Part shown: positions 10,429-62,304 of the stretch, in pieces | Position numbering within the stretch: the first letter of the stretch is position 1 | How the letters are laid out: each line of letters starts with the position of its first letter | NCBI RefSeq assembly: GCF_006345805.1 | Contig: NC_043012.1 | Location: 17,670,001 to 17,734,000, forward strand | From: Octopus sinensis | Taxonomy: Eukaryota | Length of the DNA: 64,000 nt | Direction of reading: 5' to 3' | Position numbers and translations under genes: made by a program | The notes under the pieces: generated by a model | Database searches by the model: none | Seen by the model: the letters and a program-made list of their open reading frames with translations, nothing else | Told to the model about the DNA's origin: nothing

Positions 10429-10844
10429 TGGTTTATTTATTGTTTAGATTTGAATTATGTCAATATCAGTTTTAAATTCAATCGTTTTAGCGTTAATAAT
10501 TGGTGTTTGGTTTGAGTGAGTATATTGAATACACTAAATCTCACACAGCTGAGGCTACGTTCAATTTCCGTGTAGCAAGCCAATTAAACTTGGAAGATAT
10601 ACACTATAACAAATATAAAAATATGATCTTTGAACCTACATTGTAAACACTGCTCAATTGCAATAAAAAAAATTGAATTTCTATTCGAGTGTCGTATTGG
10701 GTGCAAGATCTCTCCGCCTTCAAAACTGTAGTCTGGATATCTGGATAACTTTCCATCTCAAAAGCTATCAAATTTACTTTCTGTTTTGTTTCCAACCTCT
10801 TCCTGAATACAAACAATCCAACTTCTAGCCAACGATTCTTCTGT

Positions 10845-11785
10845 AGTTAGTTAGTTAGTTAGTTAGTTAATTTGGCTCAAAAGCAAATAGCAAGGCCATG
10901 TAGGGGGACATGGAGTTAGGTACAGGGTGCTGTTCATGTAAAGAGTTCAGGCCACTTGAGGTCAAGGGAGGCTTTGAACAAAGCGGTCGTCAGCATCTTC
11001 ACCATCTCGTCTGGCAGCTTGTTCCACGGATCCGGAACCCGGACGGAGAAAGCTCCTCTCCTTCGATTAAGATGAAATCGTCGCAGGTAGAGCTTTTCGG
11101 AATGACCCCGCAGCCGACGCTCCGGAGCAGGAGTGAAGAACAGCTCTTTCGAGAGGTTACACTTTCCGCTTATGATGTTGTGGGCGAGAATGAGATCACC
11201 ACGGCGGCGGCGTTTTTCAAGAGAATAAAGGTCGAGCGTCCTCAGCCTTTCTTCGTAGGACAAATTTTTGAGACCATGAACCATGCGGGTAGCCAGCTTC
11301 TGGACTCTTTCGAGATGCTGTATGTCTTTGAGGAGATAAGGAGAAGAGGCTTGAATCCCATACTCCAATATGGGTCTCACCAGCGTGACATAGAGTGGTA
11401 GGAATATGGCTGCTGTGAGCATTCCGAATGACCGTCGAATCAAGAACAGAATTCCGCGTGCTTTGTTGGCAGCATGGACGCACTGGGCCGAAGGCGAAAA
11501 GGAGGAATCCACCAAGATACCTAGGTCCTTTACCTGATCGGTCCTCTCCAGCAGCAGACGACCCGGCTCGAAATCAAGTTGAGTTGCAGGAGTAGAGCCG
11601 ACAGACAGATGACAGCACTTTGACACGTTCAGACACAGGTCCCAATGTTAGACCACTTCCAAATTTGGTGGAGGCATCGACGAAGATCCTCTATATTACC
11701 GCGAGGATCGACCAGTTTGATATCGTCGGCAAATAGAAGGGTGTGTTGCGTGAGGTCGTCGGGCAAGTCCGCTCTAGCCGAGAAT
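10845..11785 (-). mobile_element. 5'-truncated CR1-group LINE (RT C-terminus, short 3'UTR, (CTAA)n tail)
   Basis: FADD motif encoded at 11722-11733. After one frameshift a 230-aa ORF follows (VKDLGILVD, LVRPILEYG, LERVQKLATR, YEERL, RGH, FSVRV..WNKLP). The tail is (AGTT)6 on + at 10845-10868. Confidence 0.93.
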
Positions 11786-28477: not shown

Positions 28478-29056
28478 TGTTTTACTCTAAGCACAAGGCC
28501 CGACATTTTTGGGGAGGAAGCTAATCAATTAGATGGACCCCAGTACGCAACTGGCACTTAAGTTATCGACCCCGAAAGGAGGAAAGGCAAAGTCGACCTC
28601 GGCGGAATTTGAACACAGAACGTAAAGACATAAGAAATACCTATTTCTTTACAACCCACAAGGGGCTAAACACAGAGGGGACAAACAAGGACAGAGAAAC
28701 GGATTAAGTCGATTTTATCGATCCAGTGCGTAACTGCTACTTATTTAATCGACCCCGAAAGTATGAAAGGCAAAGTCAACTTCGGCGGAATTTGAACTCA
28801 GAACGTAGCGGCAAACTAAATACCTATTTCTTTATTACCCACAAGGGGCTAAACACAGAGGGGACAAACAAGGACAGACATAGGTATTAAGTCGATTTTA
28901 TCGACCCCAGTGCGTAACTGGTACTTATTTAATTGACCCCGAAAGGATGAAAGGCAAAGTCAACTTCGGCAGAATTTGAACTCAGAACGTGGCGGCAGAC
29001 GAAATTCCGCTAGGCATTTCACCCAGCGTGCCAACGTTTCTGCCAGCTCGCCGCCT
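28478..29056 (-). mobile_element. Head-to-tail trimer of the Deu/Nin-like SINE
   Basis: One full head (29056-28825), then two units beginning at GGTATTT (junctions 28824/5 and 28641/2). The last unit has the short-tail variant. Confidence 0.9.
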
Positions 29057-29365: not shown

Positions 29366-29426
<61 letters not shown>

Positions 29427-29980
29427 GAGTGAGAGAGCAGTGCATGCCATCAAAGTGACACTGGGGTAAAATATACGAAGCCCAATATACCCATCATGAC
29501 TACCCGTCTGATAAAGGTACACCAGGCACATGCATCACAACCATATGTGCGCGACATGGTGATTTTATATCAAGATAAACAGCACATGACCTTGCAGGTG
29601 GGGCCCAGTTAGAATTTTCTTCAGGTTGAGTAGCCCATCCCGCTCAAAAGGTCCCTGAATAAGGGTTGTTTAAGGATGTTGAAAGAACCACCCATGTTTC
29701 CAGAGGTGAATTATTCAAACCCCAAAGAATCCCTCTCAACACATGGCTATGATGCTCCCCCACTACTTCTGCTCGTGATCAGAGATGCACATATCGTCAG
29801 CCACTAAGGGACATGCTCAACTGGTTAAGGTCAAACATCTGACAAGCAAATCTGTGGTATTGAGCAGAATATTTGCTGTAGCCCATCTTTTATACCAAGA
29901 CAAAACAATGTACATGATAACACTTCCAATCAGTTAAGATCAGAAGCCATGAGAGCCACTGCCTGGTACTGTATCAGGGC
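29427..29980 (+). mobile_element. ~554-bp (TAA)n-embedded non-coding interspersed element, copy 1
   Basis: GAGTGAGAGAGCAG...GGTACTGTATCAGGGC, flanked by (ATT)n on both sides; nearly identical to the copies at 50174, 50988 and 55251. Confidence 0.92.
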
Positions 29981-30023
<43 letters not shown>

Positions 30024-30971: not shown

Positions 30972-31203
30972 GGCGGCGAGCTGGCAGAGACGTTAGCACA
31001 CCGGGCGAAGTGCTTCGCGGTATCTCGCCTGTCGCTACGTTCTGAGTTCAAATCCCGCCGAGGTCGACTTTGCCGTTCATCATTTCGGGGTCGATAAATT
31101 AAGTACCAGTTACGCACTGGGGGTCGATGTAATCGACTTAATCCGTTTGTCTGTCCTTGTTTGTCCCCTCTATGTTTAGCCCCTTGTGGGTAATAAAGAA
31201 ACA
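30972..31203 (+). mobile_element. Full-length Deu/Nin-like SINE (long tail)
   Basis: GGCGGCGAGCTGGCAGA head, GAGTTCAAATCCC B-box, tail ending GTGGGTAATAAAGAAA. AATCCTATCCT is repeated at 30955 and 31205 (probable TSD). Confidence 0.9.
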
Positions 31204-31989: not shown

Positions 31990-32197
31990 ACATAATCATC
32001 ATCATCACCATCATCATAACCATCACCACCAACATTATCATTATTATGATGATGATGATGATGATCAACATCATCATCATCGTCGGCGTCGTCGTCGTCG
32101 TCGTCGTCATCCTTATCATCATCATCATAAACATCATCACCATCATCACCACCATCACCACTACCATCATCATCACCATCACCACCATCACCACTAC

Positions 32198-32251
<54 letters not shown>

Positions 32252-32335
32252 CATCTTCATCATCATATTCATCATCATCATCATCATCGTCGTCATCATC
32301 ATCATCATCATCACCATCACCACCATCACCACTAC

Positions 32336-32381
<46 letters not shown>

Positions 32382-32490
32382 TTCATCATCATCATCATCA
32401 TCATCATCATCGTCATCATCATCATCATCATCATCATCACCACCACCACCATCACCACTACCATCATCATCATCATCATCATCATCATAG
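31990..32490. repeat. Imperfect (ATC/ACC/GTC)n triplet tract
   Basis: Direct inspection; source of the poly-Ile and poly-Met ORFs. Confidence 0.95.
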
Positions 32491-32505
32491 TCGTCATCAT
32501 TGTAT

Positions 32506-32779: not shown

Positions 32780-32922
32780 CAGAATTAGCATTATGATTCT
32801 TAGCAGAAGTAATTGCAGCAGCAGCATTATTATTATCTTTATCATTATTATTAATAGTAGTAGTTATAGTAGCAATATCACTACTACTACTACTATTACT
32901 ACTACTACTACTGCTACTACTA

Positions 32923-32955
<33 letters not shown>

Positions 32956-33012
32956 TTACTGCTGCTGCTGCTACTACTACTATTGCTGCTACGACTACTA
33001 CTACTACTATTG

Positions 33013-33063
<51 letters not shown>

Positions 33064-33115
33064 TACTACTATTGCTACTACTTCTACTACTATTGCTACT
33101 ACTTCTACTACTACT
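32730..33115. repeat. (AGT)n then (ACT/GCT)n triplet tracts
   Basis: Direct inspection. Confidence 0.95.
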
Positions 33116-33562
33116 AAAATCGTAATCAGTACTGTATATGCTTTATATATAATATACACGTGTTTCAGTAAGTCAACAGTGGTTGTTATGTAGTTTGGAT
33201 GTTCCTATTGTGCAACGCAATTTAGTCGATTACTTCCTCAGAATTTACATCAAAAATATGAAATAATGAAAATTGTCAGCCGCTGTCTAGAACAGTACAC
33301 CATTGAAATATTATCTCCTCATTACATAAGAATAAAGAGTGAATTATGCGAGAATGTAAGACTGCATATGAGCAAGCATAAGAGTGGAGGGTGAAATGAT
33401 GGTACTCTGACCAATCCGTTTTGTAACGTGGCCGCACATTCGGTGCAACTATTACACGGCATGTACGAACATATAAGCATACACAGCTAAATAAAGTTGA
33501 CGCATATACACATACGCACACACACACGTACACACACAGACACAGATATATGTATGCATATA

Positions 33563-43766: not shown

Positions 43767-43955
43767 GGGAGTAGGGGTGGTAGTGGCTAGTCTATTACAT
43801 TGACCCCAGTGCTTAACTGGTACTTATTTCATCGACCCCGGAAAGATAAAAGGCAAGGTCGACTTCGGCGCTCTTTGACCTCAGGACGAAAAGACGGACG
43901 AAATGCCACGAAGCTTTTTGTCCAGCGTCCTAACGAGTCTGCCAGCTCGCCACCT
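43767..43955 (-). mobile_element. Deu/Nin-like SINE
   Basis: Reverse complement of head (CTGCCAGCTCGCC) and core (ATCGACCCCGGAAAGATAAAAGGCAAGGTCGAC). Confidence 0.85.
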
Positions 43956-46665: not shown

Positions 46666-46878
46666 TTGCAGGTGGGGCTCAGTTAGAATTTTCTTCTGAG
46701 TAGCCCATCCCGCTGAAAAGGTCCCTGAATAAGGGATGTTTAAGGATGTTAAAAGAAAAACCCATGTTTCCAGAGGTGAATTATTCAAACCACAAAGAAT
46801 CCAGAAGCAAAACAATGTATATGATAACACTTCCAATCAGTTAACAAAGTTCAAGAGAGCTAATGCCTGGTACTGCAT
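46666..46878 (+). mobile_element. ~554-bp element, truncated and internally deleted copy
   Basis: Begins at TTGCAGGTGGGG, lacks the middle segment after CAAAGAATCC, ends GGTACTGCAT followed by (TAT)n. Confidence 0.85.
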
Positions 46879-46911
46879 TATTATTATTATTGTTATTATT
46901 ATTATCATCAT

Positions 46912-47022
<111 letters not shown>

Positions 47023-47082
47023 GTTATTATTATTATCATTATTATTATTATTATTATTATCATCATTATTATTATTATTATT

Positions 47083-47603
47083 GAGTGAGAGAACAGAGAT
47101 TGCCATCAAAGTGACACTGGGGTACAAATATACGGATCCCAGTATACCCATCATGACTACCTGTCAGACAAATATACACCAGACACAAGCATCACAACCA
47201 TACGTACGCGACATATCAAAATAAACAGCGCATGACCATGTAGGCGGGGTTCAATTCGAGTAGCCAAGCCTGCTCAATTGGTCCTTGAATAAGGGCTTTT
47301 TGAGGATGTTGCAAGAAACATGTTCCAAGAGACAAATTTTCCAAACCCCAAAGAATTCTTCTCAACATATGACTATGATGCTCCCTCACTTTCTTATGCT
47401 CATGATCAGAGATGAACATATCTCCATCCCCTAAGGGACATGCTCAACTGGTTATGGTCAAACAACTGTCAGGCAAATCTGTGGTATTGAGCAGAATAAT
47501 TGTTATAATCGATCTTCTATACCAAGACAAAACAATGTACATGATAACACTTCCAGTCAGTTAAGATCATCAGCCATGAGAGCCACTGTCTAGTTCTGCA
47601 TCA
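47083..47603 (+). mobile_element. ~554-bp element, older diverged copy
   Basis: (ATT)n-GAGTGAGAGAACAG...TAGTTCTGCATCA; colinear with 29427-29980, with more substitutions and small deletions. Confidence 0.88.
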
Positions 47604-49039: not shown

Positions 49040-49160
49040 AAATCAAATGTCTTGCTTTATTGTGGTCTTTAAATTAGGTACCAGTTGAGCACTGGGGTCG
49101 ATGCAATCGACTTAACCCCTTCCCCGAAATTACTCGCCTTGTGTCTAACTTTAAAACAGC
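49040..49160 (+). mobile_element. Deu/Nin-like SINE 3' half
   Basis: TAGGTACCAGTTGAGCACTGGGGTCGATGCAATCGACTT...CCCCGAAATT..GCCTTGTG. Confidence 0.75.
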
Positions 49161-50173: not shown

Positions 50174-50718
50174 ATGCAGTACCAGGCAGTGGCTCTCATG
50201 GCTTCTGATCTTAACTGATTGGAAGTGTTATCATGTACATTGTTTTGTCTTGGTATAAAAGATGGATACAGCAAATATTCTGCTCAATACCACAGATTTG
50301 CTTGTCTGTTGTTTGACCTTAACCAGTTGAGCATGTCCCTAGGGCTGACGATATGTGCATCTCTGATCACGAGCAGAAGTAGTGGGGGAGCATCATAGCC
50401 ATGTGTTGAGAGGGATTCTTTGGGGTTTGAATAATTCACCTCTGGAAACATGGGTGGTTCTTTCAACATCCTTAAACAACCCTGATTCAGGGACCGTTTG
50501 AGCGGGATGGGCTACTCAACCTGAAGAAAATTCTAACTGGGCCCCACCTGCAAGGTCATGTGCTGTTTATCTAGATATGAGATCACCATGTCGCGCACAT
50601 ATGGTTGTGATGCATGTGCCTGGTGTACCCTTATCAGACGGGTAGTCATGATGGGTATATTGGGCTTCGTATATTTTACCCCAGTGTCACTTTGATGGCA
50701 TGAACTGCTCTCTCACTC
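50174..50718 (-). mobile_element. ~554-bp element, copy in opposite orientation
   Basis: Reverse complement of 29427-29980; (AAT)n on both sides. Confidence 0.92.
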
Positions 50719-50739
50719 AATAATAATAATAATAATAAT

Positions 50740-50986
50740 AGCCCTGATGCAGTATAATAGCCCTGATGCAGTACCATAGCCCTGATGCAGTACCATAGCC
50801 CTGATGCAGTATAATAGCCCTGATGCAGTACCATAGCCCTGATTCAGTACCATAGCCCTGATGCAGTACCATAGCCCTGATGCAGTATAATAGCCCTGAT
50901 GCAGTACCATAGCCCTGATGCAGTACCATAGCCCTGATGCAGCACCATAGCCCTGATGCAGTACCATAGCTCTGATGCAGTATAAT
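50740..50986 (+). repeat. 13 x 19-bp tandem array made of the element terminus
   Basis: Units AGCCCTGATGCAGTACCAT (A) and AGCCCTGATGCAGTATAAT (B) in the order B A A B A A A B A A A A B. Confidence 0.97.
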
Positions 50987-50987
50987 A

Positions 50988-51540
50988 GCCATGATGCAGT
51001 ACCAGGCAGTGGCTCTCATAGCTTCTGATCTTAACTGATTGGAAGTGTTATCATGTACATTGTTTTGTCTTGGTATAAAAGATGGGCCACAGCAAATATT
51101 CTGCTCAATACCACAGATTTGCTTGTCAGTTGTTTGACCATAACCAGTTGAGCATGTCCCTTAGTGGCTGACGATATGTGCATCTCTGATCACGAGCAGA
51201 AGTAGTGGGGCAGCATCATAGCCATGTGTTGAGAGGGATTTTTGGGGTTTGAATAATTCACCTCTGGAAACATGGGTGGTTTTTTCAACATCCTTAAACA
51301 ACCCTTATTCAGGGACCTTTTGAGCGGGATGGGCTACTCAACCTGAAGAAAATTCTAACTGGGCCCCACCTGCAAGGTCATGTGCTGTTTATCTTGATAT
51401 GAGATCACTATGTCGCGCACATTTGGTTGTGATGCATGTGCCTGGTGTACCCTTATCAGACGGGTAGTCATGATGGGTATATTGGGCTTCGCATATTTTA
51501 CCCCAGTGTCACTTTGATGGCATGAACTGCTCTCTCACTC
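50988..51540 (-). mobile_element. ~554-bp element, tandem partner of the 50174-50718 copy
   Basis: Same orientation as the 50174 copy; continuous with the 19-bp array; ends CTCTCACTC-(AAT)n. Confidence 0.92.
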
Positions 51541-51573
<33 letters not shown>

Positions 51574-51574
51574 C

Positions 51575-51668
<94 letters not shown>

Positions 51669-51689
51669 TATTATTATTTCAAATTTTTG

Positions 51690-51816
51690 CCACATGGGAG
51701 CTTAGGGAAAGGGATTAAGTCGATTACATAGACCCCAGTGCGTAACTAGTACTTATTTAATCGACCCCGAAATGCCGCTAAGCATTTCGCCATGCGTGGT
51801 AACGATTCTGCTAGCC
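51690..51816 (-). mobile_element. Deu/Nin-like SINE, internally deleted
   Basis: GATTAAGTCGATTACATAGACCCCAGTGCGTAACT joined directly to head sequence GAAATGCCGCTAAGCATTTCG. Confidence 0.75.
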
Positions 51817-51841: not shown

Positions 51842-52098
51842 ATTCAAAAAATAAATTTGTCAATTTACTTCATTTTGGTTAATATATAAAGAATTGTGGT
51901 AACGCCTCCCCAATCTCAATCCTTTATATATTAACTTCAATCCTTCATATATTAATCAAAATGAAGTAGATTGACAAATTCATTTTTTGAACCGGTTGAA
52001 GACACATAAGATGGTGAAATATCGTTCACTTGATGATAATGGCACTCTTCATTAAATTTTGACACTATATCTTCGGGAGGAGTTACCTCAATCCTTTA
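51842..52098. mobile_element. Second copy of the Penelope pLTR-like unit with an inverted head
   Basis: 51842-51889 is inverted relative to ~51945-51990. The body matches 14839-14980 and ends GAGGAGTTACCTCAAT. Confidence 0.7.
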
Positions 52099-52114
52099 TA
52101 TATTATTATTATTA

Positions 52115-52197
<83 letters not shown>

Positions 52198-52231
52198 TAA
52201 TAATAATAACAATAATAATAATAATAATAAT

Positions 52232-52298
<67 letters not shown>

Positions 52299-55212: not shown

Positions 55213-55250
<38 letters not shown>

Positions 55251-55803
55251 GAGTGAGAGAGCAGTTCATGCCATCAAAGTGACACTGGGGTAAAATATAC
55301 GAAGCCCAATATACCCATCATGACTACCCGTCTGATAAAGGTACACCAGGCACATGCATCACAACCATATGTGCGCGACATGGTGATCTCATATCAAGAT
55401 AAACAGCACATGACCTTGCAGGTGGGGCCCAGTTAGAATTTTCTTCAGGTTGAGTAGCCCATCCCGCTCAAACGGTCCCTGAATAAGGGTTGTTTAAGGA
55501 TGTTGAAAGAACCACCCATGTTTCCAGAGGTGAACTATTCAAACCCCAAAGAATCCCTCTCAACACATGGCTATGATGCTCCCCCACTACTTCTGCTCGT
55601 GATCAGAGATGCAATATCGTCAGCCACTAAGGGACATGCTCAACTGGTTAAGGTCAAACAACTGACAAGCAAATCTGTGGTATTGAGCAGAATATTTGCT
55701 GTAGCCCATCTTTTATACCAAGACAAAACAATGTACATGATAACACTTCCAATCAGTTAAGATCAGAAGCCATGAGAGCCACTGCCTGGTACTTCATCAG
55801 GGC
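55251..55803 (+). mobile_element. ~554-bp element, copy 6
   Basis: (ATT)n-GAGTGAGAGAGCAG...GGTACTTCATCAGGGC-(ATT)n. Confidence 0.92.
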
Positions 55804-55839
55804 ATTATTATTATTATTATATTATTATTATTATTATTA

Positions 55840-55889
<50 letters not shown>

Positions 55890-55996
55890 TATTATTATCA
55901 TTATTATTATTATTATCATCATTATCATTATCATCTTCTTTATTATTATTATTATTATCATTATTATTATTATTATCATCATCATCATCATTATTA

Positions 55997-56036
<40 letters not shown>

Positions 56037-56176
56037 TATTATTATTATTATATTATTATTATTATTATTTTATTATCATTATTATTATTATTATCATCAT
56101 TATCATTATCATCTTCTTTATTATTATTATTATTATTATCATTATTATTATTATATCATCATCATCATCATTATTA

Positions 56177-56231
<55 letters not shown>

Positions 56232-56503
56232 TATTATTATTATTATTATTATCATTATTATTATTATTATTATTATTACTATTATTATTATTATTATTAT
56301 CATTATTATTATTATTATTATCATCATTATCATCATTATTACTATTATTATTATTATTATTTTTATTACTATTATTATTATTATTATTACTATTATTATT
56401 TATTATATTATTATTATTATTATTATTATCATTATTATTATTATTATCATTATTATCATCATTATTATTATAATTATTATTATTATTATTATTATTATTA
56501 TCA

Positions 56504-56586
<83 letters not shown>
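55804..56586. repeat. ~780-bp imperfect (ATT/ATC)n tract
   Basis: Direct inspection. Confidence 0.97.
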
Positions 56587-56588
<2 letters not shown>

Positions 56589-56939
56589 ATCATCATCATA
56601 GACACACCAGCCTCTAGCAGAACAGAATATAATTACTCTCCGTCTCCACTACAGTATTTTTCCGTGTGATTCCTACAGTAGAAAAAAAAACAAATCTACC
56701 TCATAGCTGTAGCAGTAACAACAGCAGCGGTAGCAGCAGGAGCAGAATCAGCAGCAACAACAACAACAACAATAGTGGTGTTGGTAACGTTAGTTTAAGT
56801 AATAGAACTGGAGCCGTTCATCTTGAAACGATATTTAGAACCAGCAGTGTTTCAGATGTTTCTGTTACGACATATGTTTATGAAGGCTGCCGCCGTAGTT
56901 GCTAGCATCAATACTTCCTAGAACCTGCTGCTGCTGCTG

Positions 56940-57015
56940 CTGATTATGATAATGATGATGATGATGGTGATGATGATGATGATGGTGACGACGACAACAA
57001 CGATAATGATGGTGG

Positions 57016-57053
<38 letters not shown>

Positions 57054-57207
57054 GTGACGACAACAACAATAATGATGGTGGAGATGATGATGATGATGAT
57101 GATAATGATGATGATGGTGATGATGATGGTGACGACGACAACGATAATGACGGTGGGGATGATGATGATGATGATGACGACGACGACGACAACGATAATG
57201 ATGGTGG

Positions 57208-57241
<34 letters not shown>

Positions 57242-58180
57242 GATGATGATGATGATGATGGTGATGATCATGATGATGGTGATGCTAATGATGGTGATGA
57301 TGATGTTGAAGATAGTGCTGATGATGTTCATCTTCTTGAGGAAAATAATAATGATAACAATGAGGACGATGATGATGATGATGATAATGATGACGGTGAT
57401 GACGATGACGTCGATGATAATAATGAGGATGCTGCTTCTGCTGTTGCACGTGATGACGACGACAATGATGTTGATGATGATGTTGATGGTGGTGATGGTA
57501 CTGCTGCTGCTGATGATGATGAGGCGGAGGAGGAGAGGAGGACGATGATAATGAGGACGATGATAATGAGGACGATGATAATGAGGACGATGAAGAAAAT
57601 GAAAAAAATGAGGACTGTGACGATTATGATGGTGATGATGAAGAGGTAGGTGAGGCGGGGATGAGGATGCAGTTGACGAAAAGAATGATGACTACAAGGA
57701 AACTATGACGGGATTGATGGCGATTTTGGTGTTGGCGGGGGCAACCAAGAAAGTAGCGATTAAATCTGTTGACGAGAACGAGAATCATCACATTTGTCGT
57801 CATCAAAGCCGTCTTCATCTTCATGGTCATCGTCATTATCATGATGAGGGCATGATCATCATCACTTTCATTAAGAGCGTCATCATTGCTTCGATCATCA
57901 TCATCAACAGCAGCACCACCACCACCACCAACAACACCGTTACTACTTCCACGTCTGCATCATTATCATCATCATCGTCGTCATCGCCGTCGTCGTCATA
58001 GTCTTCCGTGGTCGTCGTCATCATCATCATCATCATCATCATTTTGAGCGTCATAATTCTTATCCTCATCCTCATCTTCATCATAGTCATCAACATCACC
58101 GTCACCCTCATCAGCATCGTCGTCGTCATCACCATCGTCATCATCATCATCATCATCATCATTATCATCCTCATTATCCA
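56940..58180. repeat. (GAT/GGT/GAC)n tract followed by (ATC)n tract, with higher-order units
   Basis: Direct inspection; source of the poly-Met, poly-Asp and poly-Ile ORFs. Confidence 0.95.
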
Positions 58181-62072: not shown

Positions 62073-62304
62073 AGGCGGCGAGCTGGTAGAAACGTTAGCA
62101 CGCCGGGCGAGATTCGTAGCCGTATTTCGTCTGTCGTTACGTTCCGAGTTCAAATTCCGCCGAGGTCGACTTTGCCTTTCATCCTTTCGGGGTCGATAAA
62201 TTAAGTACCAGTTACGCACTGGGGTCGATGTAGTCGACTTAATCCCTTTGTCTGTCCTTGTTTGTCCCCTCTGTGTTTAGCCCCTTGTGGGTAGTAAAGA
62301 AATA
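62073..62304 (+). mobile_element. Full-length young Deu/Nin-like SINE (long tail) with 17-bp TSD
   Basis: TATATATTTACTAATAT at 62055-62071 and 62305-62321. Confidence 0.93.

What the first reader, a model, noticed from the sequence alone, without database searches (positions are those of the whole stretch)
50740..50986. Telomerase-like reiteration of an element terminus: 13 x 19 nt in a B-A2-B-A3-B-A4-B pattern
Each unit is the first 15 nt (B) or 18 nt (A) of the adjoining terminus, counting the flanking A, followed by TAAT or T from the TAA flank; the 14th start continues into the full element. This is what repeated abortive synthesis with realignment onto the TAA repeat would give, either at first-strand initiation or at second-strand priming. 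A-run lengths increase 2, 3, 4. It may be a fossil of reiterative copying by a retroelement RT. Ordinary post-insertion minisatellite slippage is the null explanation.
Basis: partly seen in the sequence, partly recalled or inferred. Interest (0 to 1): 0.75.

Follow-up and report, generated by a model that had tools for sequence, protein, structure and literature searches.

The report
Minisatellite at a retroelement's 5' junction
A 13-unit, 19-base tandem repeat sits where a short octopus retroelement joins its (TAA)n target; it is real, but it looks like an old minisatellite built by ordinary in-register DNA repair or exchange, not a trace of telomerase-like copying.

Summary
Window 50740-50986 holds 13 head-to-tail 19-nt units with no indels, in the order B-A2-B-A3-B-A4-B. 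A 14th start runs into a ~555-bp non-coding element.

That element is one of six copies in the window. All have the same 3' end followed by (TAA)n. Five of six also lie in (TAA)n upstream, and 5' ends vary. This is the signature of a (TAA)n-targeting, Dong/R4-type non-autonomous non-LTR retroelement, in an Octopus genome.

The repeat unit spans the flank/element junction, so it arose at such a junction. None of the other five copies has a reiteration.

Against the telomerase-like reading:
- All 13 units are exactly 19 nt, although the TAA flank offers realignment registers every 3 nt.
- A and B differ only by CC/TA.
- Realignment would rest on 1 nt of homology.

The pattern fits homology-guided polar growth instead. 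Each block ([B][AAB][AAAB][AAAAB]) is a prefix of the array to its right, with its last unit overwritten by the flank's TAAT. This also explains the rising A runs.

Private mutations (3/247) are about as dense as in the element body (9/541), so the array is old and static. An RT-coupled origin of the first duplication cannot be excluded. No other genome copies could be retrieved.

The parts
50740..50986 (+). 13 x 19-nt array, units B A A B A A A B A A A A B. The unit spans the flank/element junction: flank T(A) plus the first 17-18 nt of the element for A. In B the last CCAT is replaced by the flank's TAAT.
50987..51541 (+). Element copy 2 (full length), whose 5' end is the 14th repeat start. 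It carries a private C>A at 50991 that none of the 13 units shares.
51542..51607 (+). (TAA)n tail of copy 2, followed by an inverted (TTA)n tract at 51606-51678.
50720..50739 (+). Seven TAA repeats. They are at once the tail of copy 1 and the 5' flank of the array, and the source of the TAAT seen in B units.
50174..50719 (+). Element copy 1, head-to-tail with copy 2. It starts at element nt ~8 (TAAT|ATGCAGTACC) and has no reiteration.
29426..29981 (-). Full-length family copy with 5' junction TAATAAAT|GCCCTGATACAG. It has a (TAA)19 tail at 29368-29424 and no reiteration.
55250..55804 (-). Full-length family copy with 5' junction TAATAAT|GCCCTGATGAAG. It has a (TAA)n tail and no reiteration.
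47082..47602 (-). Older (~80% identical) family copy. Its 5' end sits at element nt 7 after (GAT)n, it has a (TAA)n tail, and it has no reiteration.
46666..46881 (-). Rearranged or deleted family fragment with 5' junction (TAA)nT|GCAGTACC, where AT is shared with the flank. No reiteration.

Best explanation
This is a locus-specific, transposon-derived minisatellite. A ~555-bp non-coding, (TAA)n-tailed non-LTR retroelement integrated into a (TAA)n tract. It is most likely a non-autonomous passenger of the (TAA)n-specific Dong/R4 LINEs that are active in octopus.

A 19-bp segment spanning the junction (flank T plus the first 18 nt) was duplicated once. This gave the A unit and was then expanded in register. 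Later growth was polar and guided by homology. Breaks or nicks in the adjoining (TAA)n flank were repaired out of register on the sister or homologue, or unequal exchange took place there. Each such event copied a prefix of the array onto its flank-proximal end and left the flank's TAAT in place of CCAT at the new internal boundary, which produces a B unit.

Four such events give [B][AAB][AAAB][AAAAB]. This fixes the 19-nt register automatically, explains why B ends like the flank, and requires A runs that do not decrease toward the element.

The array then stopped changing and collected private point mutations.

Shown: the anatomy, the family, the junction-spanning unit, the constant register, the age estimate and the fit to the prefix rule. 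Inferred: the repair or exchange mechanism, the involvement of the retroelement endonuclease at the TAA flank, and the identity of the LINE partner.
For: The array is indel-free with period 19. A and B differ only at two adjacent bases, and B's last 4-5 bases equal the flank (A)TAAT.

The observed order meets the stamped-prefix rule and is rebuilt from AAAAB by k = 4, 3, 1. Only 18 of 715 orderings meet the rule in this orientation, and 35 of 715 in either orientation.

All three point variants are singletons. Their density is 3/247, against 9/541 private changes in the body of copy 2 (p = 0.76). All growth therefore predates them.

None of the five other family copies has a reiteration.

The flank is a (TAA)7 tract that is also the tail of a second family insertion (copy 1). 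The retrotransposition machinery therefore cut this same tract at least twice.

The array strand is unusually unstructured (DNA fold z = +3.7), so hairpin-driven slippage is not the cause.

Literature: 23% of human minisatellites derive from TEs. These include 136 cases of a partial Alu repeated at the 5' end of a full Alu, attributed to recombination at the adjacent endonuclease site. Minisatellite growth is usually polar (PMC3389668). Dong targets (TAA)n in molluscs (PMC7998251). Dong-R4 is among the most recently active LINE groups in O. vulgaris (PMC13282606).
Against: There is only one locus, and the prefix rule was devised after seeing the data (nominal p about 0.025-0.05).

The first duplication has only 1 nt of flanking microhomology. 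Neither classical slipped-strand initiation nor direct-repeat-mediated duplication explains it.

The B unit next to the element needs a donor or recipient allele without an array, or a separate conversion event.

No population or orthologue data were available to show polarity or length variation.

A burst of template switches within one event would give similar products, whichever polymerase made them.
Confidence: 0.55

Rival explanations
1. Integration-coupled reiteration. During the insertion of copy 2, the retroelement RT or the second-strand polymerase repeatedly copied the first 15-18 nt of the terminus, dissociated, realigned on the TAA-repeat end and restarted, before finally running through.
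For: The unit spans the flank/element junction, so the array was born at a junction. The first duplication has only 1-nt microhomology, which is typical of end-joining or template-jump junctions rather than slippage. Private-mutation density in the array equals that of the element, which is compatible with birth at insertion. LINE RTs are known to slip on 3' tail repeats, for example I element TAA and UnaL2 TGTAA (PMC3747384). RLE-type RTs add non-templated bases and jump templates at 5' junctions (PMC2718515; PMC11331408).
Against: All 13 units are exactly 19 nt even though a (TAA)7 flank offers registers every 3 nt. Two abort points must sum to the same length by coincidence. Realignment rests on 1 nt, and for B it ignores a better TA match. 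None of the five other copies shows a reiteration. [quoted passage not shown] The model gives no reason for monotonic A runs.
Confidence: 0.2
2. The array, or part of it, already existed in the source copy and was carried here by retrotransposition. This could happen from a master transcribed from upstream (TAA)n, making it a subfamily feature and not a local event.
For: Dong-type elements are co-transcribed with upstream (TAA)n (PMC3774820), so flank bases can enter a transcript. Copy 2 has 9 private differences and an A instead of T before GCCCTG, so it could come from a distinct master.
Against: None of the five other copies in the window carries even a two-unit version, including the neighbour that shares a diagnostic C with copy 2. 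The flank bases inside the units match this locus's own junction phase (TAAT|A), which differs from the two other full-length junctions.
Confidence: 0.1
3. The array is an assembly or polishing artefact, or its copy number is wrong.
For: Short tandem arrays between two near-identical elements and microsatellites are hard to assemble. No reads were available.
Against: The units carry three different private substitutions and an ordered two-variant map, with no indels. Collapse or expansion artefacts seldom produce this.
Confidence: 0.05

Closest known systems
TE-derived minisatellites, such as Alu- and B1-derived minisatellites and partial Alu repeats at the 5' end of a full Alu (Ahmed & Liang 2012, PMC3389668; Jurka & Gentles 2006 as cited in PMC6947457)
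   Same: The tandem array has a unit that is a piece of a non-autonomous retroelement and lies directly at its 5' end. It is young-family derived. The way it started is not explained by classical slippage, and growth is by local duplication.
   Different: The unit here includes 1-4 flank bases and only 15-18 nt of the element. The array also carries a legible two-variant map that records its growth. The host is a cephalopod and the element is (TAA)n-targeted.
Polar, conversion-like minisatellite mutation and DSB-induced tandem-repeat expansion (polarity noted in PMC3389668; human MVR work by Jeffreys and yeast SDSA work by Paques and Haber are from my own knowledge)
   Same: Units are added at one end next to a break-prone flank, the copying stays in register, and flank/array boundary information is transferred.
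   Different: No population data here. The polarity is inferred from one allele's internal map only.
Reiterative copying by LINE reverse transcriptases at 3' tails (I factor (TAA)n, UnaL2 (TGTAA)n, mosquito SINE 'slippage retrotransposition'; PMC3747384) and by telomerase
   Same: A short terminal template is copied many times head to tail, and the element family itself carries a (TAA)n tail of variable length.
   Different: Those repeats are 3-5 nt, lie at the 3' end where cDNA synthesis starts, and recur in every copy. Here the unit is 19 nt, lies at the 5' end and occurs in 1 of 6 copies. The alignment region would be 1 nt.
5'-junction heterogeneity of RLE-type LINEs (R2/R1: Stage & Eickbush 2009, PMC2718515; PRINT junction classes, PMC11331408) and tandem element arrays formed by re-insertion into the target
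   Same: Junctions vary by 1-2 nt, microhomology is seen at 5'-shortened copies, and head-to-tail elements share the target repeat (copy 1 and copy 2).
   Different: None of the described junction classes is a direct multi-copy reiteration of the element's own 5' end.
Dong/R4-clade (TAA)n-specific non-LTR retrotransposons and internally deleted non-autonomous derivatives (R2 'SIDE'-like elements, from my own knowledge)
   Same: (TAA)n target and tail, no ORF, constant 3' end, and a host in which Dong-R4 is active.
   Different: No partner LINE is present in the window. No HDV-like ribozyme could be found at the 5' end.

Membership tests
Minisatellite / VNTR | Head-to-tail copies of a 10-100 bp complex unit | tested here: met
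   14.1 copies, period 19, 0% indels, score 450
Minisatellite / VNTR | Length or variant-map polymorphism among individuals | not testable with these tools
   No reads, haplotypes or orthologous locus could be fetched
TE-derived tandem repeat | Unit sequence is a segment of an interspersed element present elsewhere without the array | tested here: met
   Unit positions 2-18 equal the family 5' consensus GCCCTGATGCAGTACCA. Five other copies lack the array
Non-LTR (TPRT) retroelement, non-autonomous | Constant 3' end with a simple-repeat tail of variable length; variable or shortened 5' ends with microhomology; no ORF, no TIR/LTR | tested here: met
   All six copies end CTCTCTCACTCAA(TAA)n with 5 to more than 20 repeats. 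Three of six start at nt 7-10 with A/AT/GAT shared with the flank. No ORF longer than 100 aa in any frame
Dong/R4-clade-mobilised element | Insertion into (TAA)n microsatellite | tested here: met
   Five of six copies have (TAA)n directly upstream as well as downstream. The rule for Dong in molluscs is from PMC7998251
Dong/R4-clade-mobilised element | HDV-like self-cleaving ribozyme at the exact 5' end | tested here: not met
   No Rfam hit at E<=1 or E<=10. A double-pseudoknot descriptor search found 0 hits, while 14.5% of shuffled sequences gave at least one. The descriptor demanded a perfect P1, so a divergent ribozyme is not excluded
Dong/R4-clade-mobilised element | 3' end shared with an autonomous Dong/R4 LINE of the same genome | not testable with these tools
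   No Dong-like ORF in the window. The only LINE fragment (10854-11626) is CR1-like with a (TAAC)n-type tail
SINE (pol III head) | tRNA-, 5S- or 7SL-derived 5' head | tested here: not met
   ARAGORN found 0 genes. Rfam gathering and E-value scans found 0
Telomerase-like reiterative RT product | Product 3' end realigns on a template alignment region of at least 2-3 nt | tested here: not met
   Both junctions (ACCA|TAGCC and GTA|TAATAGCC) allow 1 nt only. A better TA alignment would give 17- or 20-nt units, which are not seen
Telomerase-like reiterative RT product | Recurs at independent insertions of the same element | tested here: not met
   None of the five other copies in the window shows it. 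The sample is small, so the frequency could still be up to about 45%
Telomerase-like reiterative RT product | Made by the element's RT | not testable with these tools
   Needs biochemistry

The most novel reading that the evidence does not exclude
The array, or at least its founding duplications, was made during integration. A Dong-type RT or second-strand polymerase repeatedly copied the frayed first 15-18 nt of the template and restarted from the TAA primer. That would be a 5'-end counterpart of the known 3'-tail slippage and a natural route from a retroelement insertion to a minisatellite.
Probability: 0.15. Interest if true: 0.7.

Novelty: new member of a known kind. Interest (0 to 1): 0.3.

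Why it matters
How minisatellites are born is still poorly explained. In the human survey, established models account for only about 6% of TE-derived arrays (PMC3389668).

This locus is a clean specimen. The unit straddles a retroelement/target junction, and the two-variant map preserves the order of growth events. The flank is itself a target of the retroelement endonuclease. A genome-wide census of such junction arrays in octopus could therefore test whether endonuclease-targeted microsatellites seed and drive minisatellites.

On present evidence it is an instructive example of a known class, not a new mechanism.

Tried and rejected
(1) Finding other arrays through their minus-strand ORF. 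A protein search with the 100-aa ORF that reads through the array returned no hits, not even the query itself. The database does not call such ORFs, so this result is uninformative.

(2) A six-frame translation of the element consensus used as a protein query returned no hits.

(3) Exact DNA scans of metagenome contigs with two element motifs, and of viral contigs, returned 0 matches.

(4) Fetching octopus DNA through a LINE protein gave one 20-kb O. vulgaris locus (L001). It holds no copy of the element. The window's own ORFs are not on record.

(5) HDV-like ribozyme at the 5' end, expected for Dong/R4: not found.

(6) tRNA or other pol III head: not found.

(7) Hairpin-driven slippage: rejected. 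The array strand folds worse than all 200 shuffles, and the 5'-end RNA hairpin is no better than shuffles.

(8) Segmental duplication as the source of the copy 1/copy 2 pair: rejected. The two copies are no closer to each other (96.5%) than to the other copies.

(9) The B unit as a chance CC>TA double substitution is possible. It needs two adjacent changes that happen to recreate the flank, so conversion from the flank is preferred.

Full report
OBSERVATION

The array is real and sits exactly as described. From 50740 to 50986 there are 13 consecutive 19-nt units. B is AGCCCTGATGCAGTATAAT, at units 1, 4, 8 and 13. A is AGCCCTGATGCAGTACCAT, at the other nine. The order is B A A B A A A B A A A A B.

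Three units carry one private substitution each (50844, 50943, 50971). The 14th start at 50987 (AGCCATGATGCAGTACCAGGCAGTGGC...) runs on into a complete element.

TRF gives period 19, 14.1 copies, 0% indels and score 450. The 15-mer occurs 16 times against 0.02 expected. Nothing else in the window is a complex-sequence minisatellite.

WHAT THE ADJOINING ELEMENT IS

BLAST of the element against the window finds six copies:
- 50987-51541 (+), the copy with the array
- 50174-50719 (+)
- 29426-29981 (-)
- 55250-55804 (-)
- an ~80% identical older copy at 47082-47602 (-)
- a rearranged fragment at 46666-46881 (-)

The four young copies are 96.5-98.7% identical. All six end with the same CTCTCTCACTCAA followed by (TAA)n of variable length. 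Five of the six also have (TAA)n directly upstream.

The 5' ends vary. Three copies are full length, with junctions TAAT|GCCCTG, TAAAT|GCCCTG and, in the array copy, TAATA|GCCCTG. Three start at element nt 7-10, where A, AT or GAT could belong to either flank or element.

There is no ORF, no tRNA-like head and no Rfam match. A constant 3' end with a simple-repeat tail, shortened 5' ends with microhomology, and insertion into the tail repeat are the marks of a non-autonomous, target-specific non-LTR retroelement.

The host is an octopus. A CR1-like LINE ORF in the window is 94% identical to an O. vulgaris protein, and 97% identical at the DNA level to the O. vulgaris locus L001. Dong/R4 LINEs insert into (TAA)n in molluscs (PMC7998251). 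They are among the most recently active LINEs of O. vulgaris (PMC13282606). A Dong/R4 partner is therefore the likely mobiliser.

That assignment is an inference. No Dong ORF is in the window. The HDV-like 5' ribozyme known for Dong and R4 (PMC3774820) could not be found, either with Rfam or with a descriptor search.

WHAT THE ARRAY IS MADE OF

Family positions 2-18 (GCCCTGATGCAGTACCA) are reproduced exactly in A units. The remaining bases (..T A..) are the last bases of this locus's own flank.

Read in the phase TAGCCCTGATGCAGTACCA, an A unit is a plain tandem duplication of one flank T plus the first 18 nt, bounded by a single shared A. B differs from A only by CC>TA. Its last five bases, ATAAT, are those of the flank.

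The unit therefore straddles a flank/element junction, so the array arose at such a junction and not inside an element. None of the other five copies has even a two-unit version.

AGE

The three point variants are all singletons, a density of 3/247. The body of copy 2 has 9 private changes in 541 columns. The two rates do not differ (p = 0.76; 95% CI for the array 0.25-3.5%).

No variant is shared between a unit and the unit it would have been copied from, so all growth predates the mutations. The array is old and static, not a currently unstable VNTR.

WHY THE TELOMERASE-LIKE READING IS NOT FAVOURED

(i) It treats A and B as two abort points, 18 and 15, followed by 1 or 4 flank bases. Nothing in that model makes 18+1 equal 15+4.

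(ii) The flank is (TAA)7, so realignment 'onto the TAA repeat' has equivalent registers every 3 nt. Yet 13 of 13 units are 19 nt with no indel.

(iii) The product ends ...ACCA and ...GTA can pair with the flank by one A only. For B a two-base TA alignment is available, but it would give 17- or 20-nt units, which are absent.

(iv) Nothing similar is seen at the other five copies. The described 5'-junction classes of R1, R2 and engineered R2 insertions are microhomology joins, non-templated bases, target duplications, snap-back and extra template. They do not include direct reiteration of the template's 5' end (PMC2718515; PMC11331408).

(v) The model gives no reason for the ordered A runs.

A HOMOLOGY-GUIDED ALTERNATIVE THAT EXPLAINS MORE

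Suppose an end carrying the flank/array boundary (...TAAT|AGCC...) pairs out of register with an internal unit boundary (...CCAT|AGCC...) on the sister or homologue. All bases to the right then match. To the left, AT matches, two bases mismatch (TA against CC), and the next A matches.

Extension or exchange from there adds a copy of the first k units to the flank-proximal end. It leaves TAAT in place of CCAT in the k-th unit, which makes that unit a B.

The register is kept automatically, and B ends like the flank for that reason. The rule predicts that every block A^rB is a prefix of what lies to its right, so r cannot decrease toward the element.

The array obeys this rule. AAAAB grows with k = 4, 3 and 1 into BAABAAABAAAAB. 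Only 18 of 715 orderings of 4 B and 9 A obey it in this orientation, and 35 of 715 in either orientation. The rule was formulated after seeing the data, so this is suggestive and not decisive.

The B unit next to the element fits an event in which an array-free allele (TAAT|element) invaded an A5 allele, or a simple conversion.

Polar growth at one end is the usual behaviour of minisatellites. Recombination provoked by the endonuclease site next to a TE's 5' end has been proposed for 136 human partial-Alu repeats (PMC3389668). Here the flank is the target of the family's own endonuclease. It is also the tail of a second insertion (copy 1), only seven TAA repeats away, so the tract was cut at least twice.

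Hairpin-mediated slippage is unlikely, because the array strand is less structured than every shuffle (z = +3.7).

WHAT REMAINS OPEN

The founding duplication has 1 nt of microhomology. The slipped-strand and direct-repeat models do not explain it well (PMC3389668; PMC6947457). It could have been made during integration or during an end-joining repair.

A single burst of template switches, by any polymerase, would leave the same products as several separate events. Inheritance from a master copy, and assembly error, cannot be excluded without more of the genome or reads.

Every route to other genomic copies failed: protein searches with the array ORF and with a six-frame element query, DNA scans, and contig look-ups.

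VERDICT

This is a transposon-derived, junction-spanning minisatellite at the 5' end of a (TAA)n-targeting octopus retroelement. It is old and static. Its internal map is best read as polar, in-register repair or exchange events starting from the (TAA)n flank (confidence 0.55).

The reverse-transcriptase mechanism is possible for the first step only, and is otherwise disfavoured (0.15-0.2). The finding is a new member of a known kind and of modest interest.

Noticed in passing
window 50174-51607: Two family copies lie head to tail, separated only by (TAA)7 plus the array. They are no more alike (96.5%) than unlinked copies, so they are two independent insertions into the same (TAA)n tract. This resembles the R1 tandem arrays formed by re-insertion into the target.
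   Followed up: partly
window 50174, 46876-46881, 47602: Three of six copies begin within a 4-nt window of the element (nt 7-10), each with A/AT/GAT shared with the flank. This is either a microhomology hotspot for 5' joining or a second RNA 5' end.
   Followed up: partly
window 28536-29005: 2.6 tandem copies (period 183, 87% matches) of a cephalopod-type SINE-like repeat (GACCCCAGTGCGTAACTGGTACTTATTTAATCGACCCCGAAAGG...). Single copies of the same repeat occur at about 49064-49121, 51704-51774, 31081-31148, 62185-62249 and 43789-43843.
   Followed up: no
window 51541-51678; 46877-47082; 52096-52298: Back-to-back (TAA)n/(TTA)n tracts, that is, palindromic trinucleotide microsatellites. They could be tail-to-tail or target-to-target insertions, or snap-back products.
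   Followed up: no
window 55804-56590: A ~790-bp impure (TAA/TGA/TAG)n tract lies directly upstream of the family copy at 55804. Large trinucleotide arrays occur elsewhere in the window, for example (CAT)170 at 31991-32500, (ACT)79 at 32880-33116 and (TGA)234 at 56941-57641.
   Followed up: no
window 10854-11626 (-): A 3' fragment of a CR1-like LINE (RT C-terminal region, 230-aa ORF) with a (TAAC)n-type tail at 10844-10869. It is 97% identical to a copy on O. vulgaris chromosome OX597823.1 (L001).
   Followed up: partly
window 50987-51014: The first 28 nt of the element RNA can pair 5' AGCCCUG with CAG.GGCU (-7.6 kcal/mol), but this is no better than shuffles (z = +0.3). Array units contain only the 5' arm.
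   Followed up: yes
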